DNA of 64,000 nucleotides from IMG/VR virus record IMGVR_UViG_3300033153_013547, positions 62,001 to 126,000 of that record; one strand, given 5' to 3'. This document shows positions 10,377 through 37,452 of the stretch, one piece after another. Under the pieces are notes generated by a model. That model searched no databases. It saw nothing but the letters and a program-made list of their open reading frames with translations, and was not told where the DNA came from. The position numbers and the translations under genes are program-made. How positions within the stretch are numbered: position 1 is the stretch's first letter; each line of letters starts with the position of its first letter.

Positions 10377-10772
10377 TCAGAAGTGGCAACCAAGTTCACC
10401 GATGGTAAACTTGTATTTGGGGTTTGTTTTGACGTAGAAGTCCCATATTTCGAGAGGGATGTCATCCAAGAAATTGTCAGTCATCCACTCTTCGAAATCT
10501 TCGCCGTAGTAGTTCTTGGGATCCAGGTACGGCAAAGTTTGCCTGACGAGAGCACGTGCCAGATGTCGCTCCAGTTTGTGCTGGATTATGGTGCCTTCTA
10601 TCTCATCATAGCAGTTCATAGGGTTGAACTCTACTATAGTGCTCCACCCCCCAACCGTGGCTTTCCACCAAGCCGTATATTTCTCAATGGACGACTGGTA
10701 GATAGTCACGAACAACAGTTCAAATAGCACACCACATATGGTGATGCTACCTGGCAACGATGTAAAATCCAT
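10377..10772 (-). CDS. hypothetical protein (start revised from 10982 to MDFTSLP)
   Basis: GGAGTGTG SD before ATG 10772, as at 10315, 11445, 17070; the upstream extension crosses a structured GC-rich element. Confidence 0.6.
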   Translation of the reverse strand: MDFTSLPGSITICGVLFELLFVTIYQSSIEKYTAWWKATVGGWSTIVEFNPMNCYDEIEGTIIQHKLERHLARALVRQTLPYLDPKNYYGEDFEEWMTDNFLDDIPLEIWDFYVKTNPKYKFTIGELGCHF

Positions 10773-10803
10773 CACACACTCCATAGAATATAAATTTGGT
10801 TGA

Positions 10804-10955
10804 AACTCTCTCTCAACCGCCCCTACGGGGGCGTAGCGCCGCAGCAGGCGGGTCAAAGCCGAGCGCGACCGAGCTTGCCGAAGGTCGTGCGTAGTGCGAA
10901 GCAGTGCTTTGATGCGCCTGACCGGCGCGTATAATGAAAAAGTTGAGAGAGAGTT
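10804..10955 (+). other. ~150-nt nested inverted-repeat (rod) element
   Basis: AACTCTCTCTCAAC/GTTGAGAGAGAGTT enclosing GCGCCG/CGGCGC, CAGGCG/CGCCTG, TCAAAGC/GCTTTGA, GCGCGACC/GGTCGTGC. Confidence 0.7.
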
Positions 10956-11050
10956 AGCAAACAGCGTACATGTTGTTAGCATTTTACATATTTATAGCTT
11001 ATTGATATAGTAGCCTTCGTTACTCTTTCTCTCCCCTATAAGAACGGAGT

Positions 11051-11083
11051 AAAAAAATACCTGCCCCCATTACAGGGGCAGGT
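11051..11083 (-). terminator. rho-independent terminator
   Basis: ACCTGCCCCT-GTAAT-GGGGGCAGGT then T7 on minus strand, just after the 11092 stop. Confidence 0.8.
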
Positions 11084-11091
11084 TGGGATGG

Positions 11092-11445
11092 TTACTGTGT
11101 GATGACACGAGTTTCTTGGACTGTGTTGGCTTCGCAGGCTTTACGAAGCCTTTCCCCATCGTTCTGGGAAATGGTCTCGATCAACTTTGCCACTTTGGTA
11201 GCGGTCTTTTTGTCGACTGGAATCCACTTTCCGTTGTCGGGGCGACGAATTCGGATATCGAATCCGTCAGGACTTACAGTAACCATGATGCTGGTTTTGG
11301 AATCATTGGAATTGAGGAAGAAAAACCAGTTAACCTCCTTGTTCCCTGTCAAGCGGATGCCCCCGCTGTTGGCATTGAAATCTCCGACGGGGAACAACCC
11401 CTTTGGGCTGTTGTCGATGATTTCCACGTTTTTAAAGTAGCTCAT
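11092..11445 (-). CDS. hypothetical protein (start revised to MSYFKNV)
   Basis: AGGAG SD before ATG 11445; terminator follows. Confidence 0.7.
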   Translation of the reverse strand: MSYFKNVEIIDNSPKGLFPVGDFNANSGGIRLTGNKEVNWFFFLNSNDSKTSIMVTVSPDGFDIRIRRPDNGKWIPVDKKTATKVAKLIETISQNDGERLRKACEANTVQETRVITQ

Positions 11446-11476
11446 AACGCACACTCCTAAAAGTTTGTTTGTCACG

Positions 11477-11744
11477 CACATCCCGTGACATAGTCTTCAG
11501 GACGAACTGCGGCTTGGCCTAGCCCCGAGCGTTAGCGAGCCCAGGAGAAGAAATGGGAGAGGTCTGACTACCATTAAAATATAAAACATGTCAGACCTGA
11601 AGGGTTCCTATTTCTTCGGATGGGTGTAGGGCTAGGCCAAGGGAGAGCAGTTTGTCACAATGTATGTCACGGATGTGAGATCGTCTAAAGTTGCGCTAGT
11701 CTCCTTTCTTTTCAAATAAATAAGTGGCTAGCGCAACTTTAGAC
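11477..11744 (+). other. ~200-nt imperfect rod plus a 62-nt hairpin; structured ssDNA or ncRNA candidate
   Basis: Five nested stems at 11477-11677 and a 19-bp stem at 11683-11744; mismatches read as G-T on the + strand. Confidence 0.65.
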
Positions 11745-12051
11745 ACCTTATGGATGTCTTTTTGACTTAGAAAAGGCGGTCAGAAATAGAAGAACCTTTC
11801 TCTATCTCCCCCCACCTGGAGAATTGCAAAATTGTCAAAAAGCATCATTGTGTAAACTACAAGCAAGTAATGTGCTACTTATTCTTAGATTGTATCATAT
11901 TGTTCTTAGATTATGCCACATCCTGAACTCAAAGCAAAACAGGGGGCATAGACGTGTTGTATGTGCAGAAGGCGATGGTCTGCCGAAGGCAACACAATGT
12001 AATATTATCTATTAAAGTTGCCCTCAGCAGACCCATCAACATCAATCCAAG

Positions 12052-12222
12052 CTAATCACTTGGGAAAATGGGATACCGTGGATCATCCAGATCCTGGGGG
12101 GGGTCTTCCACTTCATAATGTGGACACCCATCACAATCTGGGCCTACGATATCCGTCAAGCCACACACCGACTCGTTGTCGGATAGGCTAAACCACAGAT
12201 GGACACAGGCCTCTTTTTCCAT
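12052..12222 (-). CDS. 56-aa acidic Cys-containing mini-protein, not in ORF track; last cassette of array
   Basis: AAGGAGG SD supplied by repeat R1; MEKEACVHLW...DDPRYPIFPSD. Confidence 0.7.
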   Translation of the reverse strand: MEKEACVHLWFSLSDNESVCGLTDIVGPDCDGCPHYEVEDPPQDLDDPRYPIFPSD

Positions 12223-12227
12223 CTCTT

Positions 12228-12307
12228 TCCTCCTTCAAGAAAGAATCACTATGCATTCATCATGGCACAATGTAGCTTCATGGCCACCAGCTACTCGGCC
12301 AAGCAGT
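12228..12307 (-). repeat. array repeat R1 (pseudoknot + P3 hairpin + SD)
   Basis: GGCCGAGTAGCTGGTGGCCATGAAGCTACATTGTGCCATGATGAATGCATAG...AAGGAGG. Confidence 0.9.
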
Positions 12308-12631
12308 TTAGTCACGAGGATCTATAACCCCTTCGATTTCATAGTCATCAACCTCTTCGATTTCACGGTCATTATTATAATCATACGAAACTTCATCGAT
12401 CCCCACCCTGAAGAGTGGGGATCCTCCACCACACGCGTCGAGGAACGCCATCTTTACCTGATGGGGATTTTGCCAATCATCATCAGGTTCGATGATCTTA
12501 ACCCCCCGTGTACTTGCAACAATACGGCCACCGATCTCATCAATGGCAAGAAACGCAGGCTTGCCATCATCGGTAACCGACATGAATGCCCCATATGTTA
12601 AATTGAAGTAGTTGTTAAAAAACAGATTCAT
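12308..12631 (-). CDS. acidic hypothetical protein ending DPRD
   Basis: 107 aa, between R2 and R1. Confidence 0.75.
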   Translation of the reverse strand: MNLFFNNYFNLTYGAFMSVTDDGKPAFLAIDEIGGRIVASTRGVKIIEPDDDWQNPHQVKMAFLDACGGGSPLFRVGIDEVSYDYNNDREIEEVDDYEIEGVIDPRD

Positions 12632-12731
12632 CTCTTCCTCCTTAGAAAGAAATCATCACACTTTCGTAGTGATCAAGTGATCGGATGATCACACGTAGCT
12701 TCATGGCCACCAGCTACTCGGCCACACAGCT
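12632..12731 (-). repeat. array repeat R2 (pseudoknot + alternative GTGATC hairpins + SD)
   Basis: Near-identical to R9; shares the pseudoknot with R1/R5/R7/R8. Confidence 0.9.
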
Positions 12732-12887
12732 TTAGTCACGAGGATCCAGATCCAACTCAGGATCCAGATCCAAGACATCAACATCAACCCCCCATCTGCA
12801 ATCTTGTTGATAAACAAGATCGCACTCTTCTCCCTCGGAAAGGAGGCAAGTTATGCCATCCTTCCCTAGGTATTTGCATTTTTTCAT
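12732..12887 (-). CDS. 51-aa acidic Cys-rich mini-protein ending DPRD (start revised)
   Basis: MKKCKYLGKDG...LDLDPRD; the longer ORF-track start reads through repeat R3. Confidence 0.7.
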   Translation of the reverse strand: MKKCKYLGKDGITCLLSEGEECDLVYQQDCRWGVDVDVLDLDPELDLDPRD

Positions 12888-12984
12888 TTTTCTTCTCCCT
12901 TGCCCCAAAGCACAACTCTTTGGGGCAAATCGCCATGCATTCATCATGGCACAATGCAGCCACAGTGCTAACGGCTGCTCAGCT
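12888..12984 (-). repeat. array repeat R3 (pseudoknot + P3 + P4 + SD)
   Basis: GCTGAGCAGCCGTTAGCACTGTGGCTGCATTGTGCCATGATGAATGCATGGCGATTTGCCCCAAAGAGTTGTGCTTTGGGGC. Confidence 0.9.
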
Positions 12985-12990
12985 AAAATG

Positions 12991-13956
12991 TTAAACAGGC
13001 ACAATCGAGTCGCTTCCTGCCTGCAACCTGCGCCTGTTTCCCAACACGATCCCCTCTTTCGTGTTGGCGTAGCAGTAACTGCAAAGGTGTGGGCAGGTGT
13101 TATATTGCCCGATGTCTTTGCTGGCAGCGCATCCGCAGATGCGCCGCTGCCCTGAATCTTTCAGTCCGGCTGGAGTGCCGAAAAGTTTCAGCAGTGCCGG
13201 ATCATTATTTGAGATTCGGAGCAACAGCTCGTCATCGATACATTTGTTTGGCTCGATGCTTGGTTGCTGAAGATCGAGCGGCTCGGCGCAAGTCGCCAAT
13301 TTTAGCCCCCATTGCTGATTCAATCTTACCAAACCTGAAGCTGTCTCACGCATTAAAAATGGTGTGAAATCGAGCCATTTGACGCCCTTTGCCTTTAGGT
13401 TGTTTCGGACTTTACCATAAGCGTCCATATAACTGAAAACCAACTTTTCCGTATATGGATGCAATTGGTCGCCCACTCGTTTAACCTTTTCGAGAAGTCG
13501 CTCAACATTGAGCTCTTCTGTTAAGATTAGAGGATCGAAACGCCAAATCACTCTATGCTTGCCAAGACGGTTGGACAACTCTTGGAATGATTGAATGCGC
13601 GACTCCAGAGGCGGCACATTCGGTTCCAACGCGCCGCCATGGTCTGCGACATAGTCGTTGACCGTGAACTGGAAATAGTAGGCGACGCCTACTTGATCCA
13701 GCTTTTTAAGGTGTTTCATCAAGGGTTTTGGATTCTTACTCCAAAAAACGATGGCGCGCATACGCTCAAAGGAAACAAACTGGGATTTCCCATTAAAAGG
13801 ATTAACCCAGCGTGAATAGCCTTCTTCGAGTCGTCGCATAAACCAATCAGAATAAAAGGCTGGAATATCGGTAGATCGACTAGCCGATATAACTTCCGGC
13901 GCCACAGCCGTATGCACTCCACTGGATGTGGAGATTTCAGTTCTTTTCCACCTCAT
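12991..13956 (-). CDS. DUF1848 family protein (radical-SAM-like, C-terminal Cys cluster)
   Basis: ISASRSTDIPAFYSDWF, FWSKNP, WRFDP, CGCAASKDIGQYNTCPHLCSYCYAN. Confidence 0.88.
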   Translation of the reverse strand: MRWKRTEISTSSGVHTAVAPEVISASRSTDIPAFYSDWFMRRLEEGYSRWVNPFNGKSQFVSFERMRAIVFWSKNPKPLMKHLKKLDQVGVAYYFQFTVNDYVADHGGALEPNVPPLESRIQSFQELSNRLGKHRVIWRFDPLILTEELNVERLLEKVKRVGDQLHPYTEKLVFSYMDAYGKVRNNLKAKGVKWLDFTPFLMRETASGLVRLNQQWGLKLATCAEPLDLQQPSIEPNKCIDDELLLRISNNDPALLKLFGTPAGLKDSGQRRICGCAASKDIGQYNTCPHLCSYCYANTKEGIVLGNRRRLQAGSDSIVPV

Positions 13957-14050
13957 CTACTCTCCCTACCCCAAAGCACAACTCTTTGGGGCAAATCGCC
14001 ATGCATTCATCATGGCACAATGCAACTTCATTGCTATCAGTTGCTCAGCT
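13957..14050 (-). repeat. array repeat R4
   Basis: Same architecture; S2 stem variant GCAACT/AGTTGC. Confidence 0.9.
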
Positions 14051-14057
14051 AATTAAT

Positions 14058-14582
14058 TCACCAATTCTGTTGAACAAACGCCACAATGGCGTCAAAGGTG
14101 TTTAGATCAACATCTTTGACGCCATTGTTGCCAATGATGGTCAACGGAATCCCCAGGCCAAGGGCAATCCTTATCCCCTGGCCTGTACCACCAAGGCCCC
14201 GTTTGTTAGACGGAGCAGCAATTACAGAATCACAACCAAAAATGATTCTGTAATTCCTTCCGTGCAACTTCCTTGCCCCCATAGACAAATATCCTGGGGC
14301 AGGATGATATTTGTCAACGGAAGCAAAGGCCGCCTGGTCGCTCATGGACAAAACATGAACGACCTTGCAAAGGCCCTGGATTTGAGAATTGTACGACGGC
14401 CACGGCACATGACCTTCAGTACTTATTCCCAAATTTCTGGCATGCTCGATGGCAACTTTGTCAATACCATCAGCGCAGCCAGAGACAACTACAGACCCTT
14501 TATCAAGAGATTCTACAATCTCTCTGACAATGCGGATCTGGGGACCAGAGGGGTCTCTGGTCCCTATCACAGCAATCTTCAT
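14058..14582 (-). CDS. SLOG superfamily (DprA/Smf-like) nucleotide-binding protein
   Basis: IAVIGTR, VVSGCADGID, GGTGQGIRIALGLGIP. Confidence 0.75.
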   Translation of the reverse strand: MKIAVIGTRDPSGPQIRIVREIVESLDKGSVVVSGCADGIDKVAIEHARNLGISTEGHVPWPSYNSQIQGLCKVVHVLSMSDQAAFASVDKYHPAPGYLSMGARKLHGRNYRIIFGCDSVIAAPSNKRGLGGTGQGIRIALGLGIPLTIIGNNGVKDVDLNTFDAIVAFVQQNW

Positions 14583-14666
14583 TCCTTTTCTCCTTCAAAA
14601 AAGAATCGCCATGCATTCATCATGGCACAATGTAGCTTCATGGCCATCAGCTACTCGGCCAGGCAG
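14583..14666 (-). repeat. array repeat R5 (no P4)
   Basis: Close match to R1. Confidence 0.9.
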
Positions 14667-14673
14667 ACAATTG

Positions 14674-14934
14674 TTAATGAACAATCACTCCATCTTTCAC
14701 CCTTCTTAGGGCAAAGATGAAGTCATCGCCTTGCATATAGACGATGACCTTTACATCCGAGGTGTCGAAACACTCTATACTGGTCTCGACAAATTTTAAG
14801 GGATCGTTAAGGTACGCATCAGCGTCATTAACATCCAGCACCCATGTGCCGGTTATCGGGAGCCTAAACGCCTCCCGAATGATAACATGTGATCCCGGAC
14901 TTGCCGGGATCGTGGGGTATATAATTCTCCTCAT
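14674..14934 (-). CDS. hypothetical protein (start revised to MRRIIYP)
   Basis: AAGGAG SD of R6. Confidence 0.65.
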   Translation of the reverse strand: MRRIIYPTIPASPGSHVIIREAFRLPITGTWVLDVNDADAYLNDPLKFVETSIECFDTSDVKVIVYMQGDDFIFALRRVKDGVIVH

Positions 14935-14940
14935 CCCCAT

Positions 14941-15032
14941 CTCCTTTGCCCCAAAGCACAACTCTTTGGGGTAAAATCGCCATGTATTCATCATGGCACA
15001 ATGTAGCCTTATGACTATCGGCTGCTCAGTCA
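14941..15032 (-). repeat. array repeat R6
   Basis: S1 variant GACTG/TAGTC. Confidence 0.9.
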
Positions 15033-15039
15033 AGAGAAC

Positions 15040-15423
15040 TTAGGCAGAATCTCTGATCTTCATCAGGATCCTGCCCAGATGGTTCAGTCCAACTCCGTTG
15101 CTTACGCCCCAGAATTGGTCTCCCCACCAATTCTCTTCAACGATCTCCCCCTTTATGGCCTGAAGTTTGGCCATAAAGACAGGATCGCTGAACTTTTTAC
15201 TTACCAGATCCTCCATGATCTGGAGTTTGACCTGATCCCAGTCAGGCCTAAGCCTAACTGTTTTGCCAATCTTTTTGGCAATAAACCCGTTGGTCACACC
15301 AACGAATCTTGCCTGATCAGCAGGATCAGTACACTTTGCCTTCTGGTACTCCACCTCCACACAGTACCCTAACGAATTAGGACACATGTTGGACAGAAAC
15401 CAGAAGATGCCCCTGAATCTCAT
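15040..15423 (-). CDS. NADAR (YbiA-like) ADP-ribose/N-glycosidase
   Basis: FLSN, VEYQKAK, RPDWDQVKLQIM, KF, IVEENWWGDQFWG, GLNHLGRILMKIR; AAGGAGG SD. Confidence 0.9.
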   Translation of the reverse strand: MRFRGIFWFLSNMCPNSLGYCVEVEYQKAKCTDPADQARFVGVTNGFIAKKIGKTVRLRPDWDQVKLQIMEDLVSKKFSDPVFMAKLQAIKGEIVEENWWGDQFWGVSNGVGLNHLGRILMKIRDSA

Positions 15424-15433
15424 AATCACCTCC

Positions 15434-15847
15434 TTAGTGATATATCTCAACATTCAGATCAAGATCAGCCAGTTTATCAGACATCATCTGCCTAACCACT
15501 GGCCAATCCAGACCTCCAAGGCCACATCCAAGCCTGGGGAAGGCTATGGACCTAAAACTCCAGGTTTGGGTGGCAAAATCATCAAGACCATCAGAGATAT
15601 ACTCCAATTTGCTTGGATCTCTCCAATGATCCTTGGTGGGGAACAGTAGAACATTCTCCACCAAGATGACCTTGCCAGGCCTTAGAATGCCTGCAGAGCA
15701 TAGCCTGGCATACTCTGCAAACACCATGGGAAACCTTGCTTTGAACTCCAAGGCAAGACCCTTGCCCATCACGCCAACACAGTTGACGGGATTGACAAGA
15801 ACCTCACATTTGGAATCAAACAGATCCCCCCGCAGCAACAACAACAT
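15434..15847 (-). CDS. macrodomain ADP-ribosylhydrolase (DarG/Poa1/TARG1-like class)
   Basis: GDLF, VNPVNCVGVMGKGLALEFK, FPTKDHW, SIAFPRLGCGLGGLDW. Confidence 0.9.
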   Translation of the reverse strand: MLLLLRGDLFDSKCEVLVNPVNCVGVMGKGLALEFKARFPMVFAEYARLCSAGILRPGKVILVENVLLFPTKDHWRDPSKLEYISDGLDDFATQTWSFRSIAFPRLGCGLGGLDWPVVRQMMSDKLADLDLNVEIYH

Positions 15848-15951
15848 CTCCTCCTCCTTTACCCCAAAGCACAACTCTTTGGGGTAAAATCGCCATGTAT
15901 TCATCATGGCACAATGTAGCTTCATGGCCACCAGCTACTCGGCCAAGCAGT
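15848..15951 (-). repeat. array repeat R7
   Basis: GGCCG-type pseudoknot + P3 + P4. Confidence 0.9.
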
Positions 15952-16155
15952 TTAATCACGAGGATATCTGATGACATCATTCATGGTATCATGGTCAATA
16001 TCAGCAGATATCGTCTTGATTGCTTCCAACTTGATGAAAGCGCACAGAAGTCCCCGCACTTCTTCGATTTCATCAAATAAAATCTTGCTCCGATGAAAGA
16101 GCAAGACTATCGTCACCACAAGGGCGGCGATAATAATCGACATTAATAACAACAT
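15952..16155 (-). CDS. 67-aa membrane-anchored protein ending YPRD (start revised)
   Basis: MLLLMSIIIAALVVTIVLLF hydrophobic N-term; SD from R8. Confidence 0.7.
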   Translation of the reverse strand: MLLLMSIIIAALVVTIVLLFHRSKILFDEIEEVRGLLCAFIKLEAIKTISADIDHDTMNDVIRYPRD

Positions 16156-16258
16156 CTCCTCCTCCTTTACCCCAAAGCACAACTCTTTGGAGCAAAATCG
16201 CCATGTATTCATCATGGCACAATGCAGCTTCATGGCCACCAGCTACTCGGCCAAGCAG
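16156..16258 (-). repeat. array repeat R8
   Basis: Near-identical to R7. Confidence 0.9.
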
Positions 16259-16561
16259 TTACTTCTTCTGCTTTTCAACCCATTCCTTTATCACGTCTCC
16301 GTGACAAGGGCTGGGTTTGCAAAAGCAGACAAGGGTCTTCCCATCAAGTTCAAGCACCCTCCTCTTGAACTCGGGGTCAGACCCCAATCTGCTCAGGAAG
16401 TACTCCCTATACTTAGGTAGGGAGCTACCCCCTGAGCCGGGGAATGGATTCCCAAAATATCCATCCATTCCCCTACCAGCCCTTCCTATGTAAACATAGG
16501 AAGGGTCATCGCGCCACCCCTTAGGGGCGTCGCGAATATTAATAACGTTGATAGGCAACAA
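16259..16561 (-). CDS. DUF4326 family protein
   Basis: YVYIGR...FGNPF...LDGKTLVCFCKPSPCHGDVI; AAGGAGG SD favours TTG at 16561 (ORF track start 16594). Confidence 0.85.
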   Translation of the reverse strand: MLPINVINIRDAPKGWRDDPSYVYIGRAGRGMDGYFGNPFPGSGGSSLPKYREYFLSRLGSDPEFKRRVLELDGKTLVCFCKPSPCHGDVIKEWVEKQKK

Positions 16562-16629
16562 AATCACCTCCTTTTGTTGCCGGTCAATCGACACGGTTTC
16601 GGCAGACCACGTGTCATTCTGCAGACAAA

Positions 16630-17070
16630 TTACATGAAATCTCCCACAATCAGGTCACCCTTCTTGTGGGAGATTTTCTTCCCCCTTGGTCGGGGCGCAG
16701 GCACCTTCTTGGCGGGCACCTTCTTGGCAGGTGCCTTAACCTCTCTGGGCCACTTGCAATAATGCTTGACTGGCCCAGAGGCAGGCCGCTCTGCTGTTGC
16801 TGCCACCACTTCCACAGCAACAGCCTTTTTCACAGTAGGCCCAACCACATCATGGATGAGCCTACTGCAACACAGCTGCTTCCTGAGACGAAGTATTGCC
16901 TCGCCTCCGTCCACGCCTGTGGGGATCGTGCCCCTCCAACCGGGAACACGTTCCCCGTTGAGGTAGGCTTCACAGTACTGAAGCCCACCCCTTTCAAACA
17001 GGGGGGAGAATTTAATCTTTACCCTCTTCCCCCCCAACAAAATGTCAGGGGGACGAATCAAATTAGGCAC
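16630..17070 (-). CDS. hypothetical protein with basic PAKK tail
   Basis: AAGGAG SD, GTG start; KAPAKKVPAKKVPAP repeat. Confidence 0.65.
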   Translation of the reverse strand: MPNLIRPPDILLGGKRVKIKFSPLFERGGLQYCEAYLNGERVPGWRGTIPTGVDGGEAILRLRKQLCCSRLIHDVVGPTVKKAVAVEVVAATAERPASGPVKHYCKWPREVKAPAKKVPAKKVPAPRPRGKKISHKKGDLIVGDFM

Positions 17071-17143
17071 AGTAACACACTCCTTTCTGCCAGGTATATC
17101 CTGGATCAGATGAGCAGTTTATTGTCTTGCTCAGGACACAATG

Positions 17144-17464
17144 TTATAAACCAAGTTCCTCCCTGACACGATCCCTATTGACGGGATAAATGTTTATCTC
17201 ATCTATCCCATCAATAGAAACCCTGAACAATTGCCAGGGGCCCCCATCTGCTGGGATGAACCAGTATAGAGGATTATACCCCTTGGCTTCCTCAAACTCC
17301 TTCGCTGCTCTTCCGAACAGCGAATTCTTCCGGGGATTTTGTTGCCAAACTTCTCCCCAAATCTGCCCTATTGGCTTGGCAGATTTGAGCATCACCCCAG
17401 AAATGGTGGCTCTTGGTGCGGAGCAGACCGCCTTACGCACCAAGGCAATAATTTTCTCTTCCAT
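17144..17464 (-). CDS. hypothetical protein
   Basis: SD from R9. Confidence 0.75.
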   Translation of the reverse strand: MEEKIIALVRKAVCSAPRATISGVMLKSAKPIGQIWGEVWQQNPRKNSLFGRAAKEFEEAKGYNPLYWFIPADGGPWQLFRVSIDGIDEINIYPVNRDRVREELGL

Positions 17465-17562
17465 TTTTCCTCCTTAGAAAGAAATCATCACACTTTCGTA
17501 GTGATCAAGTGATCGGATGATCACGCGTAGCTTCATGGCCATCAGCTACTCGGCCATACAGT
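17465..17562 (-). repeat. array repeat R9 (R2 type)
   Basis: Near-identical to 12632-12731. Confidence 0.9.
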
Positions 17563-17645
17563 TTAGTCACGAGGGTCCAGAATGTCACCATGGCTTGTTG
17601 TCAGCCAGAAATGGCTTTCAACCCATAGACCAATGCCCCAACTGA

Positions 17646-18611
17646 CTAAATTCCCCGTGCCCAGAGAGCGTTCCGGCGCGCTTCTTTTTCGGCGCGCGCC
17701 TTTTCAACTCGTTCGCGAAGCTCCGGGGGAACATAGCCCGGCGTGTCGGGCGGTTCCGTAGCAGACACCGTAAATGTCTGCAGGAAAACGCTCGCGTACT
17801 CTTCCACCTGTTCGAGGGACAGCTCGACCCCCGAACGCAGCTCTTTGGGCAACTGGTAATCCAGATCAACTTCCACCACTCTCTCGGCGTGAACCGCGAT
17901 GTGTGGCGGGAGGCTGCCTTGCGTGGTATAAACGTCCTTCCCCATCACGTCATCCACTGCGGCATTCTCCACGACTGGCGTTCCCTTTGTCACCAGTCCT
18001 ATTTTCTCCAGATACGTCACGAACGCCGGATGGCGCGTGACGATGATGTTCCCATTTTCCATGGGAACAATATCCGACGCCCTGAGCAAATCTGACGCGA
18101 TGAAAGAGTACGCCTTGAGCTCACCGCTCGCGTACTCTTCCACCTGTTCAAGGGTCAGTTCGACCCCAGAACGCAGTTCATCGGGTAAATCGAGCGTGAG
18201 CTCGATTAACTTTTCTGAATACACCGCCAAGTGCAGGGGAATATACCCCTGCGTGGTGTAAACAGACCTTAAGGGACCGAGAGGTATCCCCGTCATGTCA
18301 TGACGGCTCCGCACATTCTTGAGCCACGTCACACGCCGTGCGCTGCCGAATGTGTGGATCTTCGCAAAATAACGCGCCACTGCGAGGTGGCGCGAAACGA
18401 CAAGATCTTTCGGCGGATAAATCTCCACTAGTCGGACAACGCGCGACTCGCCCTCCTCCAGGTAATTCCCGTAGGAATCCTGGACGGAACCCGAGGCTAT
18501 CGTCGTTCGATAGCCGTGCTCGATATCTATGGGGCCGCACCGGCGACCCTTGAAGTCCCTGATTTTCTCAAGCCTAGCCTCATTCCAGGCTTGAAACTCC
18601 TTCTCATTCAT
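17646..18611 (-). CDS. tandem two-domain Csx16-like (Cas_VVA1548) putative ring nuclease
   Basis: Two repeats of VV(S/T)RH...G(Y/S)(I/L)PxH(L/I)A...LPxELRSGVEL(T/S)LEQVEEYA. Confidence 0.7.
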   Translation of the reverse strand: MNEKEFQAWNEARLEKIRDFKGRRCGPIDIEHGYRTTIASGSVQDSYGNYLEEGESRVVRLVEIYPPKDLVVSRHLAVARYFAKIHTFGSARRVTWLKNVRSRHDMTGIPLGPLRSVYTTQGYIPLHLAVYSEKLIELTLDLPDELRSGVELTLEQVEEYASGELKAYSFIASDLLRASDIVPMENGNIIVTRHPAFVTYLEKIGLVTKGTPVVENAAVDDVMGKDVYTTQGSLPPHIAVHAERVVEVDLDYQLPKELRSGVELSLEQVEEYASVFLQTFTVSATEPPDTPGYVPPELRERVEKARAEKEARRNALWARGI

Positions 18612-18668
18612 ATCAATCTCTCCTTGCCCTGCACTAGCCGCGGCAGGGCTTCGCGGTTGTGTGTTACC

Positions 18669-18953
18669 CTATGCAAACTGCACGATGTACGCCACGGGCG
18701 TGCTGGCGTATTCGCGCACTTGCTCAAGGGTCAGCTCGACCCCCCTCATCTCCGCCGGAATATCCAGCGGAACTTCGATCACTCGCCGCGCATGCACGGC
18801 GAGCCGAAGAGGAAGAACGCCGAAAACGTTCTTCCCCATTACATCGTCGACCGTGGCATGTGCCACGATGGGCGTGCCTTCCGGCACTAACCCTATCTCG
18901 ATCAAATACGTCACCAATGCTGGGTGACGCGTAACAACAATACTTTTATTCAT
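18669..18953 (-). CDS. csx16: Csx16-like (Cas_VVA1548) putative cOA ring nuclease, 94 aa (start revised)
   Basis: IVVTRHPA...GVLPLRLA...LDIPAEMRGVELTLEQV fits the Csx16 pattern hhsRHpgA...GtLPxhLA...LdlPxexRGxELs. Confidence 0.75.
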   Translation of the reverse strand: MNKSIVVTRHPALVTYLIEIGLVPEGTPIVAHATVDDVMGKNVFGVLPLRLAVHARRVIEVPLDIPAEMRGVELTLEQVREYASTPVAYIVQFA

Positions 18954-19048
18954 CTCTTCTCCTTTACCCCAAAGCACAACTCTTTGGGGCAAATCGCCAT
19001 GTATTCATCATGGCACAATGCAGCCACAGTGCTGTCGGCTACTCAGCT
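18954..19048 (-). repeat. array repeat R10
   Basis: Same architecture as R3. Confidence 0.9.
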
Positions 19049-19086
19049 GTGGGGGGCGATCCTGTTTCGATGTTGACAGGATCCAT

Positions 19087-19117
19087 AAAAAAAGAGAGAG
19101 GCCCGAAGGCCCCTCTC
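19087..19117 (-). terminator. rho-independent terminator (copy 1)
   Basis: GAGAGGGGCC-TTCG-GGCCTCTCTC + T7. Confidence 0.85.
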
Positions 19118-19120
19118 CGA

Positions 19121-19210
19121 TGATGCCTATATTTCTCCTTTCCCGGCATCAGGGAGTTTCACCACTATGCAGGTGACGCATACATTTTGTTTATCCAGAT
19201 GTAAACTGGA
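19121..19210 (-). ncRNA. candidate structured RNA, three tandem H-type pseudoknots (copy 1)
   Basis: TCCAG/CTGGA + TACAT/ATGTA; TGC/GCA + TCACC/GGTGA; TCCC/GGGA + TGATGCC/GGCATCA; covaries with copy 2. Confidence 0.55.
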
Positions 19211-19234
19211 ATCCGGTTTTGAAAGGGGAGGGGG

Positions 19235-19690
19235 TTACTCTATTATTGGGAGGACATCCCCTTCTTCAAAGTCATACTGCCACGGATCATAATCCGTGGC
19301 AAGACCAATTGCTGTGACCATGTCTTTTGCGACGATCACAGCAAACCCCTGAAATTCCTCGCCCCCATCGTAGGGGACGAGGAACCCCCCGGGTTCCTTT
19401 TCTTCCGGACACTCCGGAAGGTTGGGGGCAAGTTTTCTTGCCCCCAACTGAAGGGTCCTCCAGACGGAGGTTTTTACTCCGTCTAGAAACCCTGACTCCC
19501 CACGTAAAATGGGGTAAAACACGCTAGTCGCTGCAGCGGCCAGCGTGCTCGCTCCTCCGGCTCTCATGAGCCGGAAGTACGAAATATTGCCGCTAACAGC
19601 AACTGGGCACCACGTCCTGTGGAGGGGCAGACACTGCCCATACCCCTCCACAGGGCGTAAAAAGACCGATAGCCAAAAAATTTTAGCCAT
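19235..19690 (-). CDS. hypothetical protein, paralog of 19972..20442 (start revised)
   Basis: MAKIFWLSV...FRLMRAGGA...LVPYDGGE. Confidence 0.75.
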   Translation of the reverse strand: MAKIFWLSVFLRPVEGYGQCLPLHRTWCPVAVSGNISYFRLMRAGGASTLAAAATSVFYPILRGESGFLDGVKTSVWRTLQLGARKLAPNLPECPEEKEPGGFLVPYDGGEEFQGFAVIVAKDMVTAIGLATDYDPWQYDFEEGDVLPIIE

Positions 19691-19696
19691 TCCCAT

Positions 19697-19787
19697 CTCC
19701 CTTACCCCAAAGCACAACTCTTTGGGGTAAAATCGCCATGTATTCATCATGGCACAATGCAACCACAGTGCTAACGGCTGCTCAGCT
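19697..19787 (-). repeat. array repeat R11
   Basis: Same architecture as R3. Confidence 0.9.
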
Positions 19788-19825
19788 GTGGGGGGCGATC
19801 CTGTCTCGATGTTGACAGGATCCAT

Positions 19826-19857
19826 AAAAAAAAGAGAGAGGCCCGAAGGCCTCTCTC
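19826..19857 (-). terminator. rho-independent terminator (copy 2)
   Basis: GAGAGAGGCC-TTCG-GGCCTCTCTC + T8. Confidence 0.85.
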
Positions 19858-19860
19858 CGG

Positions 19861-19952
19861 TGATACCTATATTTCTCCTTTCCCGGTATCAGGGAGTTTC
19901 ACCACTATGCAGGTGACGCATACATTTTGTTTATCCAGATGTAAAAACTGGA
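19861..19952 (-). ncRNA. candidate structured RNA, three tandem pseudoknots (copy 2)
   Basis: TGATACC/GGTATCA compensatory change; a 2-nt insertion falls in a loop. Confidence 0.55.
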
Positions 19953-19971
19953 ATCCGATTTTGAAAAGGGG

Positions 19972-20442
19972 TTACCCTATTATCGGGATAATATCCCGAT
20001 AATCCGTAGCAAAGTCGTCTCGCCACAGATCGTAATCTATGGCGAGATCAATCGCCGTGGTCGCATTTTTTGCGACTACGACGACAAACCCCTCGAATTC
20101 GCCCCCATCGTAGGGGACGAGCACTTTGCAGAATACCCCGGAACGTTCCGGGATATCGGGGGCAAGCAAAGCTACCCCCACCTGCATTGTTCTCCGGACA
20201 AATGTTACCCACTTGTCTAGAGAATTTACCTCGCTCAAGAGCCAATCCGCATTTGTTAAAATGGGATAAAATATACTAGCCACTATAGCGGTTAGTATAT
20301 CCGCTCCTCCGGCTCTCATGAGCCGGAAGTGCGAAACGCCGTCGCTTTCAGCGACGACGTTCCATGACTCATTATCGGGGGGGTTTTCTTTAAACCCCTC
20401 GATCTTGTCGAGTAAAACTGACAGCCAAAAGATCTTGGCCAT
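19972..20442 (-). CDS. hypothetical protein, paralog of 19235..19690 (start revised)
   Basis: Shared motifs; SD from R12. Confidence 0.75.
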   Translation of the reverse strand: MAKIFWLSVLLDKIEGFKENPPDNESWNVVAESDGVSHFRLMRAGGADILTAIVASIFYPILTNADWLLSEVNSLDKWVTFVRRTMQVGVALLAPDIPERSGVFCKVLVPYDGGEFEGFVVVVAKNATTAIDLAIDYDLWRDDFATDYRDIIPIIG

Positions 20443-20537
20443 CTCCTCCTCCTTTGCCCCAAAGCACAACTCTTTGGGGCAAATCGCCATGTATTCATCA
20501 TGGCACAATGCAACTTCATTGCTATCAGTTGCTCAGC
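20443..20537 (-). repeat. array repeat R12
   Basis: R4-type pseudoknot + P3 + P4 + AAGGAGGAGG. Confidence 0.9.
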
Positions 20538-20628
20538 GTCATATCGCAGATTTCCTAACCGGTGTCTGCCAACCGGCCACAGCCAAAATAGTGACTGTGG
20601 CCACCGCCTACGTTGCGGAGGCGGTGGT

Positions 20629-20835
20629 TTAAAACCCCCGAGCCTCAAGGTCGAGGCATATGTCTTCGTATGCCTCGACCTTGAGCTCGTCAGCAAGGGA
20701 ATCTAAATAACTCCCTTGCTGAACGTTGAGGCGTTCTACCTTGCGGCAGAACGCCTCAACAAGCTCAAGGCGACGATAAGGATTCTTGCAATCCTTAATC
20801 GCCTCCTTGAGCTTAAACAACTCAAGAAATCTCAT
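20629..20835 (-). CDS. 68-aa hypothetical protein, first gene of array (start revised)
   Basis: AAGGAGG SD before MRFLELF. Confidence 0.7.
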   Translation of the reverse strand: MRFLELFKLKEAIKDCKNPYRRLELVEAFCRKVERLNVQQGSYLDSLADELKVEAYEDICLDLEARGF

Positions 20836-26943: not shown

Positions 26944-27073
26944 CCAAACAAGAAGTGTTAGAAAAACTTCAAGATCTTATGGACAAATATGGGTGTGGCA
27001 TTCCTTATGGTGCAATAATAATTATTAGAAATATTATTGTAGAACTAAGTAAGGAATTGGGGGAGAAAGGCTA

Positions 27074-27604
27074 ATGCCAGACATAAAAGAATATACAAGT
27101 ATTGATCCTAATGTAAAGTTTTTGGGTGCTGCTACTGTGCACTCTTTTACTAGTATAGATGGAGATGTAGTGATTGGAGACAATACCACAATATGGCAAT
27201 CTACAAATATTGCAGGCAAAGTTTCCGTAGGCTCAAATTGTGTAATTGGTTCTCAGTGCTCAATTCTGGGCACCAAGATGCCCACAATCATTGGCAAACA
27301 TGTTCGTATGCAGTCTCATTGTTTTATTCCTGATGGCACAGTAATTGGAGACAACACCTTTCTTGCCCCTGGGGTTACGATTTTGAACGATAAATATCCC
27401 CCATCATCCAGTCACAAAGATTGGAGTCCCGTAACAATCGAAAATGGGGCACGTATAGGCGGAGGAGTAGTCATTTTACCCGGCGTCACCATTGGCAAGG
27501 GTGCTCTGGTGGGGGCAGGTTCGGTTGTGACCAAGGACGTTATTCCCAACTCTGTGGTCAAAGGAAGCCCAGCAAGGATTTGGGTGATACCATCCCTTGA
27601 ATAA
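27074..27604 (+). CDS. hexapeptide-repeat sugar N-acetyltransferase (WbpD/WlbB-like)
   Basis: Left-handed beta-helix repeats; NDKYP; [29 protein letters not shown]. Confidence 0.88.
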
Positions 27605-29389: not shown

Positions 29390-29398
29390 TTGTGTCTC

Positions 29399-30280: not shown

Positions 30281-30295
30281 TATTGTTTTCTCCTA

Positions 30296-31531: not shown

Positions 31532-31532
31532 G

Positions 31533-32558: not shown

Positions 32559-32567
32559 AATAATTCC

Positions 32568-33392: not shown

Positions 33393-33399
33393 TGATTCT

Positions 33400-34392: not shown

Positions 34393-34394
34393 AA

Positions 34395-37290: not shown

Positions 37291-37452
37291 TTGTCTTGTT
37301 CTTTTCGGGGTGTTCTGGATCTTTGATGCTATTCATTTTTATTTTCATTATGTATTTTATGATGACATGGTACACAAATGGATCATATCCACTTCTTTCT
37401 TTTAATTGCTTATACACAATTCAATCCAGTCAAATAGTATTTGTTTCTTTCT

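What the first reader, a model, noticed from the sequence alone, without database searches (positions are those of the whole stretch)
12052..20835. Phage anti-defence gene-cassette array delimited by 12 modular RNA-structured repeats
Seen: about 18 short co-oriented genes separated by 12 copies (R1-R12) of an 80-105-nt element. Each ends in the next gene's Shine-Dalgarno and most begin within a few nt of the previous stop codon. The element is built from swappable modules: a pseudoknot (several sequence variants), a P3 hairpin (GCCATG-ATGAATR-CATGGC or an unrelated GTGATC type) and an optional P4 hairpin (CCCCAAAG-AGTTGTG-CTTTGGGG). Modules occur in mixed combinations, e.g. the GGCCG pseudoknot with no P4 (R1, R5), with P4 (R7, R8) or with the alternative hairpins (R2, R9). 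Known: NADAR, macrodomain and Csx16 families act on defence-related nucleotide chemistry. Inference: an integron-like but integrase-free platform, where the repeat serves both as a portable expression leader and as homology for gaining, losing, duplicating and shuffling counter-defence cassettes. No integrase lies in the window.
Basis: partly seen in the sequence, partly recalled or inferred. Interest (0 to 1): 0.93.

Follow-up and report, generated by a model that had tools for sequence, protein, structure and literature searches.

The report
Repeated structured leaders heading phage anti-defence genes
A giant phage from a metagenome carries an island of foreign genes, many resembling the 'off-switches' of bacterial defence systems, and each gene unit starts with a copy of the same modular, folded ~100-base leader; the leader is new, but the principle (repeated regulatory cassettes that also drive gene shuffling) is already known from T4-like phages.

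Summary
On the minus strand of 12052-20835 lie 17 co-oriented genes forming 12 units. Each unit is headed by an 85-116 nt element found nowhere else in the window (covariance model: 12 hits, the next is noise). The element is modular: a two-helix pseudoknot region with compensatory changes, a P3 hairpin or an alternative hairpin pair, an optional P4 hairpin, then the Shine-Dalgarno.

The cargo is compositionally foreign (GC3 0.42-0.65 against 0.30-0.38 in core genes) and rich in defence off-switch homologues: a DarG-type macrodomain, NADAR, DUF4326, a ShosA/PsyrA-like DprA domain, DUF1848 and two Csx16 proteins.

Footprints of recombination at the repeats are present. Unrelated genes share termini supplied by the repeat, an orphan gene tail survives, leader-plus-gene duplicates exist, and one gene pair is circularly permuted against a bacterial donor-like element.

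No relative of the phage or the element exists in any searchable collection, and the one independent assembly is identical. Gain and loss of cassettes is therefore untested. There is no integrase, no attC-like site, no sigma-70 promoter and no Rfam match.

Best reading: a private intercistronic RNA leader that also serves as recombination homology. It is a new variant of the PeSL principle, not an integron.

The parts
20443..20545 (-). R12 leader: PK variant C + P3 + P4 + SD, precedes g2
   Evidence: 120 bits
19691..19795 (-). R11 leader: PK variant B + P3 + P4 + SD, precedes g3
   Evidence: 115 bits
18954..19056 (-). R10 leader: PK variant B + P3 + P4 + SD, precedes g4; joins the acquired g4 at the SD
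   Evidence: 117 bits
17465..17580 (-). R9 leader: orphan gene tail (LDPRD-stop, 17563-17580) + PK-A + alternative hairpin pair + SD, precedes g6
   Evidence: D6, D12; 28.5 bits
16156..16258 (-). R8 leader: PK-A + P3 + P4 + SD, precedes g9; 97% identical to R7 over 116 nt, including the first 11 nt of the ORF
   Evidence: (D1)
15848..15951 (-). R7 leader: PK-A + P3 + P4 + SD, precedes g10
14935..15039 (-). R6 leader: PK variant D (TGACT/AGTCA) + P3 + P4 + SD, precedes g12
14583..14673 (-). R5 leader: PK-A + P3, no P4, U-rich tract + SD, precedes g13
   Evidence: 69 bits
13957..14057 (-). R4 leader: PK variant C + P3 + P4 + SD, precedes g14; 91-94% identical to R12, 6.5 kb away
12888..12990 (-). 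R3 leader: PK variant B + P3 + P4 + SD, precedes g15
   Evidence: 121 bits
12632..12750 (-). R2 leader: shared tail (last codons of g15, DPRD-stop) + PK-A + alternative hairpin pair + SD, precedes g16; 96% identical to R9
   Evidence: (D6)
12223..12321 (-). R1 leader: shared tail (last codons of g16) + PK-A + degenerate P3, no P4, SD, precedes g17
   Evidence: D12; 65.5 bits
20629..20835 (-). g1, 68 aa, unknown; first gene of the array, with its own SD and no leader
19972..20442 (-). g2, 156 aa, orphan family (paralogue of g3, 50% aa identity)
19235..19690 (-). g3, 151 aa, paralogue of g2
19796..19971 (-). Structured spacer after g2 with a strong intrinsic terminator (19858-19833) and a 10-bp hairpin; 95% identical to the spacer after g3
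19057..19234 (-). Structured spacer after g3 with a strong intrinsic terminator (19118-19093); duplicate of the one after g2
18669..18953 (-). g4, 94 aa, Csx16 (Cas_VVA1548) family
17646..18611 (-). g5, 321 aa, two Csx16-like repeats in one chain; 68% aa / 74% nt identical to a gene in a bacterial mobile element (L007)
17144..17464 (-). g6, 106 aa, unknown; weak C-terminal similarity to g16
16630..17070 (-). g7, 146 aa, unknown, own SD, no leader
16259..16558 (-). g8, 99 aa, DUF4326 (rhodanese-phosphatase clade linked to ADP-ribose processing)
15952..16155 (-). g9, 67 aa, hydrophobic N-terminus; first codons (MLLL) and last codons (PRD-stop) supplied by the repeats
15434..15847 (-). g10, 137 aa, DarG-type macrodomain without the DarT-binding C-terminal part
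   Evidence: DarG 3e-52; 5m31, 5m3i
15040..15423 (-). g11, 127 aa, NADAR domain, 10 nt after g10
14674..14934 (-). g12, 86 aa, unknown
14058..14582 (-). g13, 174 aa, DprA/SLOG-like; matches the DprA-like part of ShosA and PsyrA
12991..13956 (-). g14, 321 aa, DUF1848; matches the DUF1848 accessory protein of defence reverse-transcriptase systems
   Evidence: 5e-92; 1e-44
12732..12887 (-). g15, 51 aa, Cys-rich and acidic, ends in the repeat-encoded DPRD-stop
12308..12631 (-). g16, 107 aa, unknown, ends in the repeat-encoded DPRD-stop
12052..12222 (-). g17, 56 aa, Cys-rich and acidic, last gene of the repeat array

Best explanation
The region is an accessory, largely counter-defence island of a 261-kb jumbo phage. 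It consists of 12 expression units of horizontally acquired genes, and each unit is headed by a private modular leader.

The leader most likely acts in the mRNA as an intercistronic insulator. The pseudoknot region sits 5-12 nt after the upstream stop codon, where it could cap and protect the 3' end of the upstream cistron. A short conserved single-stranded linker follows. Then P3 and P4 (or the alternative hairpins) form a stable 5' structure that abuts a strong SD, giving every foreign gene the same protected 5' end and the same ribosome-binding site, whatever its origin.

As DNA, the same 60-116-nt near-identical direct repeats provide homology for the phage's recombination machinery. Genes have therefore been joined to, duplicated with and exchanged between leaders.

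Shown: the repeats, their modularity, compensatory base-pair changes, the foreign composition of the cargo, the cargo families and the junction footprints.

Inferred: the RNA-level role (stability, processing, translation), ongoing shuffling, and the counter-defence activity of the cargo.
For: Repeat reality and confinement.

Modular mosaic: PK-A occurs with three different 3' parts, and P3+P4 occurs with four PK variants.

Structure: S2 is 98.5% paired with 3 of 6 pairs compensatory; S1 is 83.6% paired with 2 of 5 compensatory; slid controls give 22-58%. Folds are more stable than shuffles, with z of -1.5 to -3.9 for the six copies folded on the sense strand. The sense strand has 19 G.U pairs against 4 A.C mismatches. 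The P4 stem ends directly at the SD.

Not coding: frames differ among copies, 1-nt indels occur in the linker, and in-frame stops are present.

Foreign cargo: GC3 is 0.42-0.65 against 0.30-0.38 in core genes. The g4/g5 pair is 74-77% nt identical to a 56%-GC bacterial mobile element that lacks the repeats, and R10 joins g4 at the SD.

Recombination footprints: PRD-stop tails are shared by the unrelated g9, g15 and g16, and an orphan tail follows g5. R7/R8 identity runs 11 nt into two unrelated ORFs. The R2/R9 leaders are 96% identical in front of proteins with only a weak residual similarity. Between the g2 and g3 units, coding DNA is 61% identical and the non-coding spacer 91-95%. g4-g5 is circularly permuted against the bacterial order.

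Cargo families. Literature.
Against: There are no expression data, so processing, stabilisation or translational effects are untested.

P3 and P4 are invariant among copies, so they give no covariation evidence. The covariation rests on about four PK variants in paralogous copies of one genome.

S1 is only 3 bp in the B and C variants, and the pseudoknot loops are short (2, 3 and 3 nt), so S1 and S2 may be alternative helices rather than simultaneous ones.

Two strong terminators lie inside the array, upstream of R11 and R10. This is awkward for a simple single-operon model and leaves room for a promoter or antiterminator role.

The G.U against A.C excess is modest once shared ancestry is allowed for.

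No relative or population variant shows an actual cassette gain, loss or swap.
Confidence: 0.55

Rival explanations
1. PeSL-type transcriptional cassettes. Each repeat would be a promoter (for the host or a phage RNA polymerase) combined with an attenuator stem-loop, so each unit is its own transcription unit, and shuffling is the known PeSL mechanism.
For: The layout is the same as PeSLs: the upstream stop codon at the 5' edge and the SD plus start at the 3' edge, at high density in a plastic region of ORFans. Strong terminators upstream of R10 and R11 imply that transcription must restart or read through there. P3 followed by a U-rich tract is flagged as terminator-like in R5 and R8.
Against: The consensus scan finds no -35/-10 pair inside any repeat unit, and there is no AT-rich UP region (the repeats are 44-51% GC). 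The module that varies does so by compensatory changes that keep base pairs, which is typical of RNA structure and not of a promoter. A phage-specific promoter would be expected elsewhere in the genome, but exact scans of the whole 261-kb contig find the modules only in this array.
Confidence: 0.15
2. Operator sites for a trans-acting RNA-binding protein or nuclease. A phage or host factor would recognise the invariant P3/P4 hairpins and loops to time or repress translation, or to cut between cistrons. This would resemble T4 RegA/RegB targets or the RNase III sites between T7 early genes (own knowledge).
For: P3 and P4 are sequence-invariant, loops included, over 8-10 copies while the PK drifts. 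A TTGTGC motif occurs twice per element, in the linker before P3 and in the P4 loop. The position next to the SD suits translational control.
Against: The alternative hairpin module (R2, R9) has an unrelated sequence, so one sequence-specific factor cannot serve all copies. No candidate factor has been identified. Invariance is equally explained by gene conversion or recent spread.
Confidence: 0.12
3. A passive by-product. The leaders would be relics of serial tandem duplication of one ancestral leader-gene unit, kept alike by gene conversion, with no function beyond carrying an SD.
For: A higher-order pattern in leader types (C, B, A-alt, A-noP4 occurs twice along the array) and leader-plus-gene duplicates (g2/g3, g6/g16) point to segmental duplication. 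The P3 loop base is A in R6-R12 and G in R1 and R3-R5, a positional gradient typical of local conversion.
Against: Most genes behind the leaders are unrelated and come from different sources. Compensatory changes keep both PK helices. Non-coding parts are much more conserved than the coding parts of the same duplicated units. Long near-identical direct repeats are a deletion hazard, which selection would remove if they were useless.
Confidence: 0.1
4. Recombination sites of a dedicated site-specific system (attC-like, folded single strand) served by a recombinase encoded elsewhere in the 261-kb genome: a true integron analogue.
For: One structured element per cassette, in one orientation, with cargo from many sources. 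The pairing is strand-specific, which a folded DNA strand would also show. g4-g5 is circularly permuted relative to the bacterial arrangement, as expected from a circular intermediate.
Against: No recombinase family is on record from about 2.4 kb left of the window to window position 33.8 kb. There is no GTTRRRY/RYYYAAC core on either strand, and the element is three or four separate helices, not one imperfect palindrome. Junctions are not at a fixed point: some lie inside the upstream ORF, some at the SD and some 11 nt into the downstream ORF. That pattern fits homologous or illegitimate exchange, not site-specific exchange.
Confidence: 0.05
5. The repeat is coding. It would encode a shared N-terminal peptide (for example a capsid- or compartment-targeting signal) fused to each cargo protein, as automatic gene callers implicitly assumed.
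For: In R3, R6, R7, R8, R11 and R12 the frame stays open for 29 or more codons upstream of the SD-preceded start, and the JGI gene calls run through the leaders.
Against: The module frames relative to the start differ (P3 in frame 0 six times, frame 2 three times, frame 1 once). 1-nt linker indels shift the frame between P3 and P4. Stops occur within 0-7 codons of the start in R1, R2, R4, R5 and R9. No SD precedes the internal AUGs, whereas a strong SD precedes every annotated start.
Confidence: 0.03

Closest known systems
PeSLs (promoter-early stem-loops) of T4-type phages (Arbiol et al. 2010, PMC2839356; Comeau et al. 2014, PMC4122927)
   Same: Short repeated regulatory cassettes packed into a plastic region of small non-essential genes. 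Each is bounded by the upstream stop codon and by the downstream SD and start, and each contains a stem-loop. They act as homology for insertion, deletion, replacement and circle formation.
   Different: PeSLs are defined by a sigma-70 promoter with an AT-rich upstream region and a terminator stem-loop, and they occur about 50 times across the genome. This element has no recognisable promoter. It is GC-balanced, much longer and more strongly conserved. It has a covarying pseudoknot region and swappable hairpin modules, and it is confined to one island. Shuffling between relatives has been demonstrated for PeSLs and not for this element.
Start-associated sequences (SAS/ESAS) of Cluster K mycobacteriophages (Pope et al. 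2011, PMC3203893)
   Same: A phage-specific repeat directly upstream of the start codons of a subset of genes, in one orientation. Half of the copies are extended by an inverted repeat with a variable spacer. A role in translation initiation has been proposed.
   Different: SAS is 13 bp and ESAS is a pair of 17-bp inverted repeats. They are scattered over the genome and tied to particular gene families that are conserved among relatives. The sequence is unrelated, there is no pseudoknot, and no link to gene shuffling or foreign cargo has been made.
RNase III processing sites between T7 early genes (own knowledge: Dunn and Studier 1983; not checked here)
   Same: Similar structured elements repeated between the cistrons of a phage early polycistronic RNA. 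They define and stabilise the ends of individual mRNAs.
   Different: T7 sites are single irregular hairpins cut by host RNase III, with no modular mosaic. Cleavage has not been tested for this element.
BOX elements of Streptococcus pneumoniae and BIME/REP elements of enterobacteria (Croucher et al. 2011, PMC3049150; BIME from own knowledge)
   Same: Intergenic repeats built from modules in variable combinations. They are transcribed with neighbouring genes and fold into stable RNA structures.
   Different: These are dispersed chromosomal elements thought to be mobile. They do not form an ordered array, are not fused to the SD of each following gene, and are not phage elements.
Integron cassette arrays
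   Same: A co-oriented array of unrelated, horizontally acquired genes, with one structured element per cassette.
   Different: There is no integrase, no attI and no attC architecture or core sites. The element lies 5' of its gene and carries the gene's SD. The junction points vary.
Phage orphan antitoxin counter-defence genes (AdfN NADAR against DarTG1, PMC11257639; phage DarG-like proteins, PMC11481870, PMC13309987; viral ring nucleases and Csx16, bioRxiv 10.1101/2024.09.24.614671)
   Same: The cargo belongs to the same families: a DarG-type macrodomain, NADAR and Csx16, plus DUF4326 and SLOG/DprA-like proteins that co-occur with them in large phages (PMC9503650).
   Different: Here at least six such genes are collected in one 9-kb island under a common leader. 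None has been tested.

Membership tests
PeSL (T4-type promoter-early stem-loop) | Sigma-70-like -35/-10 promoter with an AT-rich upstream region inside the motif | tested here: not met
   The consensus scan places no promoter inside the body of any repeat. The only nearby hit (17588-17560) lies mostly upstream of R9 and overlaps only its orphan-tail edge. The repeats are 44-51% GC. A non-sigma-70 promoter cannot be excluded.
PeSL (T4-type promoter-early stem-loop) | Stem-loop acting as a terminator or attenuator | tested here: inconclusive
   Stable hairpins are present. Only P3 of R5 and R8 is followed by a T-rich tract and flagged as terminator-like. P4 is followed by the SD, not a T-run.
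PeSL (T4-type promoter-early stem-loop) | Bounded by the upstream stop codon and the downstream SD and start; enriched in plastic regions of ORFans | tested here: met
   12 of 12 copies end in the SD, and 8 of 12 start 5-12 nt after a stop. The island is compositionally foreign, and 9 of 17 genes have no family.
PeSL (T4-type promoter-early stem-loop) | Indels and replacements between related phages map to the repeats; mini-circles form | not testable with these tools
   No related phage was found in any collection. The single independent assembly is identical. No reads are available. Only internal footprints are seen.
Integron | IntI tyrosine recombinase with attI and Pc next to the array | tested here: not met
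   No recombinase family appears among the precomputed Pfam hits for genes from about 2.4 kb left of the window to window position 33.8 kb. The rest of the 261-kb contig was not inspected.
Integron | attC sites: a single imperfect palindrome with R''/L''-L'/R' and a GTTRRRY core at the 3' end of each cassette | tested here: not met
   Read directly from the sequences: no GTTRRRY occurs on either strand of the element. The fold is a set of three or four separate helices. The element carries the SD of the gene that follows it.
SAS/ESAS (Cluster K mycobacteriophages) | 13-bp conserved sequence 3-8 bp before start codons, optionally with 17-bp inverted repeats; dispersed across the genome and tied to gene families | tested here: not met
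   This element is 85-116 nt with a different sequence and is confined to one island. The description of the family comes from PMC3203893.
Any Rfam family (ribozymes, riboswitches, leaders, put/EAR-type antiterminators) | Score at or above the family's gathering threshold | tested here: not met
   There are 0 hits at gathering thresholds in the whole window. In the E<=10 scan of the array, no hit lies on a repeat.
DarG antitoxin (for g10) | DarG-type macrodomain plus a C-terminal DarT-binding domain, encoded next to darT | tested here: not met
   The macrodomain matches strongly: PADLOC DarG at 3e-52 over profile positions 1-143 of 329, and PDB 5m31/5m3i at 1e-30. The C-terminal half and darT are absent. 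g10 is therefore an orphan DarG-like macrodomain, not a DarTG system.
Csx16 ring nuclease (for g4, g5) | Cas_VVA1548 fold; cA4-specific ring nuclease activity | tested here: inconclusive
   The family match is met: Pfam 1e-14 and 9e-13, PADLOC 2e-13 and 1e-10. Activity is known for a family member only and has not been tested for these proteins. The structure models were unusable.

The most novel reading that the evidence does not exclude
The leader is the recognition module of a dedicated, integrase-free gene-capture system. A structured RNA or single-stranded DNA element (the pseudoknot plus hairpins) would be used by an unidentified phage function to install host defence 'off-switch' genes behind a ready-made expression signal. 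This would explain the junctions at the SD, the circular permutation of g4-g5 and the collection of orphan antitoxin-like genes. Alternatively, the pseudoknot module is a new self-processing RNA that cuts the polycistron into unit mRNAs.
Probability: 0.08. Interest if true: 0.9.

Novelty: new variant of a known kind. Interest (0 to 1): 0.6.

Why it matters
If the reading holds, it extends the PeSL principle to an unrelated jumbo phage lineage, with an RNA-structured rather than promoter-based cassette. The principle is that a phage keeps a plastic island in which a repeated regulatory element both expresses foreign genes and makes them easy to duplicate, lose or swap.

The reading also yields three practical items:
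- A compact, transferable 'expression adaptor' (pseudoknot, hairpins, SD) whose parts can be tested by compensatory mutagenesis.
- A short list of candidate counter-defence genes for direct testing: an orphan DarG macrodomain, NADAR, DUF4326, a ShosA-like DprA domain, DUF1848 and a tandem Csx16.
- Several unknown small proteins that are anti-defence candidates by association (g1-g3, g6, g7, g9, g12, g15-g17).

The finding also flags an annotation artefact. Gene callers read through the leaders and add spurious N-terminal extensions.

Tried and rejected
Searches for the element elsewhere all found only the source contig or nothing:
- Exact-pattern scans of IMG/VR for P3, P4, the alternative hairpin module and the terminator spacer.
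- Metagenome contigs for P3 and P4.
- Genome contigs for P3 and PK-A.
- megablast and blastn against GenBank phages and PLSDB plasmids.
- Rfam at gathering and at E<=10.

Searches for related phages through the flanking genes returned self only.

A possible 'empty site' in the sister sample turned out to be an assembly break. L010 and L012 overlap by 18 nt and are collinear with the window.

Other viral loci with homologous cargo (macrodomain, DUF1848) have no repeat arrays.

Structure prediction gave pLDDT 38 for g2/g3 and 36 for g5, so no fold search was run. The exhaustive profile search for g2/g3 found only a weak match in a 2,206-aa repeat protein.

Hypotheses rejected:
- Coding N-terminal peptide.
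- tRNA or tmRNA.
- MITE-like element: the two ends of the unit are not inverted repeats of each other, as read.
- CRISPR-like array: the repeats are about 100 nt and the 'spacers' are genes.
- attC: no core sites.

One literature search failed on a term that was too short, so the T7 RNase III comparison rests on my own knowledge.

Full report
**What is there.** The window is part of IMG/VR contig UViG_3300033153_013547, 261,124 bp. It is a jumbo phage with a PhoH gene, a class II ribonucleotide reductase interrupted by an intein, and a portal protein 25-27% identical to those of Bacillus phage 0305phi8-36-type phages.

Between 12052 and 20835, all on the minus strand, lie 17 genes with strong Shine-Dalgarno (SD) sequences. 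Twelve of the 16 spacers between them contain a copy of one repeated element. The other four spacers (g4-g5, g6-g7, g7-g8, g10-g11) do not. The array is therefore 12 units: [g2] [g3] [g4-g5] [g6-g7-g8] [g9] [g10-g11] [g12] [g13] [g14] [g15] [g16] [g17], preceded by g1.

**Is it more than chance?** Yes. The P3 hairpin has 10 copies, the P4 hairpin 8 and the commonest pseudoknot variant 6. All are on the minus strand and all lie inside the array, with 0-0.03 matches expected by chance. A covariance model built from the eight full-length copies recovers all twelve at 28-121 bits with filters off. The next hit in the 64-kb window scores 16.5 bits.

**Anatomy of the element.** Read 5' to 3' on the transcript, each element has these parts:
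- **Shared tail (four PK-A copies only).** The repeat starts inside the upstream gene and supplies its last codons and stop (…PRD-stop).
- **Module A.** Two interleaved helices, S1 (5 bp) and S2 (6 bp), in four sequence variants (A to D).
- **Linker.** A conserved single-stranded stretch.
- **Hairpin module.** Either P3 (6-7 bp with a 7-nt loop) or an unrelated pair of hairpins (R2, R9).
- **P4 (optional).** 8 bp, extendable to 11-12 bp.
- **SD.** It begins right at the foot of P4, or lies in a small U-rich hairpin where P4 is absent.

PK-A occurs with P3 only (R1, R5), with P3+P4 (R7, R8) and with the alternative hairpins (R2, R9). P3+P4 occurs behind all four PK variants.

**Is the structure real?** On an ungapped alignment of module A, 91.7% of cells form standard pairs, against 22-58% when the 3' partners are slid by 1-3 columns. 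Five of 11 pairs change on both sides. S2 is 98.5% paired, with three compensatory pairs. S1 is 83.6% paired, with two compensatory pairs, including TGGCC/GGCCA against TGACT/AGTCA.

There are caveats. The copies are paralogues in one genome with only about four independent variants. S1 shrinks to 3 bp in variants B and C. The loops are short (2, 3 and 3 nt), so S1 and S2 might be alternative helices rather than simultaneous ones.

P3 and P4 never vary, so they neither support nor contradict a fold by covariation. They are thermodynamically stable. Over all helices the sense strand shows 19 G.U pairs (about ten independent) against 4 A.C mismatches. That is modest evidence that the transcript strand is the one that folds.

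**What it is not.**
- It matches no Rfam family, even at E<=10, and no tRNA or tmRNA.
- It holds no sigma-70-type promoter.
- It is not a coding N-terminal extension, although gene callers treated it as one. The frames of the modules relative to the start differ among copies, 1-nt indels shift the frame inside the element, five copies have stops within seven codons of the start, and no SD precedes the internal AUGs.
- It has no terminal inverted repeats and no attC-type core (read).
- No recombinase family is recorded from about 2.4 kb left of the window to window position 33.8 kb.

**The cargo.** All 17 genes have GC3 of 0.42-0.65, while core phage genes have 0.30-0.38. The right edge of the island is sharp, dropping to 32% GC beyond about 20900.

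- g10 is a DarG-type macrodomain: PADLOC DarG at 3e-52, and closest solved structures 5m31 and 5m3i. It lacks the DarT-binding half.
- g11, 10 nt downstream of g10, is a NADAR.
- g8 is DUF4326.
- g13 matches the DprA-like part of the ShosA and PsyrA proteins.
- g14 is DUF1848, matching the accessory protein of defence reverse-transcriptase systems.
- g4 is a Csx16, and g5 carries two Csx16-like repeats in one chain.

Published work supports the reading as counter-defence. Phage NADARs neutralise DarTG1 (PMC11257639). Csx16 is a cA4-specific ring nuclease (bioRxiv 10.1101/2024.09.24.614671). Macro, NADAR, SLOG and DUF4326 co-occur in large phages, often in early regions (PMC9503650). The counter-defence reading is therefore well founded by homology and untested by function. 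Nine genes have no family at all.

**Evidence that recombination at the repeats built the array.**
1. Three unrelated proteins (g9, g15, g16) end in the same repeat-encoded PRD-stop. An orphan copy of that tail (LDPRD-stop, 17563-17580) lies in the spacer after g5, with no gene attached.
2. R7 and R8 are 97% identical over 116 nt, and the identity runs 11 nt into two unrelated ORFs, which therefore both begin MLLL.
3. The g4/g5 pair is 74-77% identical in DNA to a pair in a 56%-GC bacterial mobile element that sits next to a serine recombinase and has no repeats (L007, L008). In the phage the pair is circularly permuted. The g4-g5 spacer corresponds to the region upstream of the g5 homologue, and R10 is joined to g4 at the SD.
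4. Leader and gene were duplicated together at least twice. g2 and g3 are 50% identical in protein. g6 and g16 share a residual C-terminal similarity (z = 9), and both follow the alternative-hairpin leader, which is 96% identical between the two copies. In the g2/g3 duplication, coding DNA is 61% identical while the 281-nt spacers are 91-95% identical, with one compensatory change in a hairpin. The non-coding parts are therefore either under stronger constraint or homogenised by gene conversion.
5. Leader types follow a higher-order order: C, B, B, A-alt, A, A, D, A-noP4, and then again C, B, A-alt, A-noP4.

**What could not be shown.** No other genome carries this element. Exact scans for four modules in IMG/VR, for two modules each in the metagenome and genome collections, and blastn against phages and plasmids all returned only the source contig or nothing.

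The flanking core genes have no homologue other than themselves among 5.8 billion proteins. The sister sample 3300033148 yields two contigs that together are collinear with the window. One is 100% and the other 99.96% identical, so there is no variant. Six other viral loci with homologous cargo have no such arrays.

**How it most likely works.** I commit to a dual role with 0.55 confidence.

In the RNA, the element would insulate each foreign cistron. The pseudoknot region sits 5-12 nt after the upstream stop, where it can cap the 3' end of the upstream message. The conserved linker is a candidate cleavage site. P3 and P4 form a stable 5' structure abutting a strong SD, the arrangement that protects mRNAs from 5' exonucleolytic decay in SD-dependent hosts (own knowledge of 5' stabilisers in Bacillus). 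It also gives uniform translation initiation.

In the DNA, the 60-116-nt near-identical direct repeats are unavoidable substrates for phage homologous recombination, and the footprints above show that this has happened.

The two strong terminators inside the array, ahead of R11 and R10, are the main loose end. They leave room for a promoter or antitermination role, which is why the PeSL-type rival keeps 0.15.

**Comparison with known systems.**
- **PeSLs of T4-type phages** are the nearest analogue in principle. The layout and the proposed evolutionary role are the same. The defining promoter is absent here, and the terminator role is unproven, so this element is not a member.
- **SAS/ESAS of Cluster K mycobacteriophages** share the 'repeat in front of start codons' idea and nothing else.
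- **T7 RNase III sites** are the nearest analogue for the RNA role (own knowledge).
- **BOX and BIME elements** are the nearest analogue for modular composition.
- **Integrons** share only the look of a cassette array.

The element itself is new and private to one uncultivated phage. The principle is known, so I rate it a new variant of a known kind, with interest 0.6.

The most novel reading not excluded is a dedicated capture mechanism or a self-processing RNA. I give it about 0.08.

Noticed in passing
window 19057-19234 and 19796-19971 (minus strand): The spacers after g2 and g3 are 95% identical although the genes are only 61% identical in DNA. Each holds a ~130-nt structured stretch, a strong intrinsic terminator and a 10-bp hairpin. 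One hairpin shows a compensatory change (GATACC/GGTATC against GATGCC/GGCATC) and has an SD-like sequence in its loop. They could be a 3'-derived small RNA or an attenuator. The only Rfam hint is a weak match to a Listeria sRNA that covers just the terminator.
   Followed up: partly
window 17646-18953; L007 9954-11271: g5 is a single chain with two Csx16-like repeats (a possible built-in dimer of a ring nuclease). It sits next to a stand-alone Csx16 (g4). The same pair occurs in the opposite order in a bacterial contig (GCA_021158185.1), beside a serine recombinase and an HTH gene, which suggests a temperate element as donor or fellow recipient.
   Followed up: partly
window 12223-20545, leader order: Leader types recur in the same order twice along the array (C, B, A-alt ... 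A-noP4, then C, B, A-alt, A-noP4). The single variable base of the P3 loop is A in R6-R12 and G in R1 and R3-R5. This indicates an old block duplication, local gene conversion, or both.
   Followed up: partly
window 12732-13004, 14674-15033, 15434-15931, 15952-16239, 18669-18992, 19235-19825, 19972-20508: Automatic gene calls in the public records run through the leaders and give g2, g3, g4, g9, g10, g12 and g15 spurious N-terminal extensions of 8-45 residues. This annotation artefact is caused by the open frame in some repeat copies.
   Followed up: yes
window 10377-12051: The GC-rich island continues left of the repeat array without repeats. It holds about 600 nt of non-coding DNA with a 30-nt inverted repeat (11683-11744, SD-like loop), a co-oriented 117-aa gene (11445-11092) followed by a strong terminator (11082-11051), and a 201-aa ORF (10377-10982). 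The sister-sample assembly breaks at 11631-11648, next to the inverted repeat.
   Followed up: partly
window 41225-44446 and 53323-56220: The class II ribonucleotide reductase carries an intein with a LAGLIDADG homing endonuclease. A second 965-aa protein of unknown family also carries an intein splicing domain.
   Followed up: no
window about 27000-40200: A block of sugar-modifying genes lies inside the phage: a hexapeptide acetyltransferase, a GFO/IDH/MocA oxidoreductase, a UDP-GlcNAc 2-epimerase-type protein, a PGA_cap protein and a radical SAM protein (precomputed Pfam hits). This may be a glycan or nonulosonic-acid pathway for virion or DNA modification.
   Followed up: no
window 19972-20442 (g2), residues 79-158: The only outside match to the g2/g3 family among 1.84 billion representatives is a weak, three-fold repeated match (E 8e-8) inside a 2,206-aa protein with Listeria-Bacteroides repeat domains.
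   Followed up: partly
window, each P3/P4-type leader: The hexamer TTGTGC occurs twice per element, about 36 nt apart: once in the single-stranded linker before P3 and once in the P4 loop. It may be a recognition motif or a coincidence.
   Followed up: no
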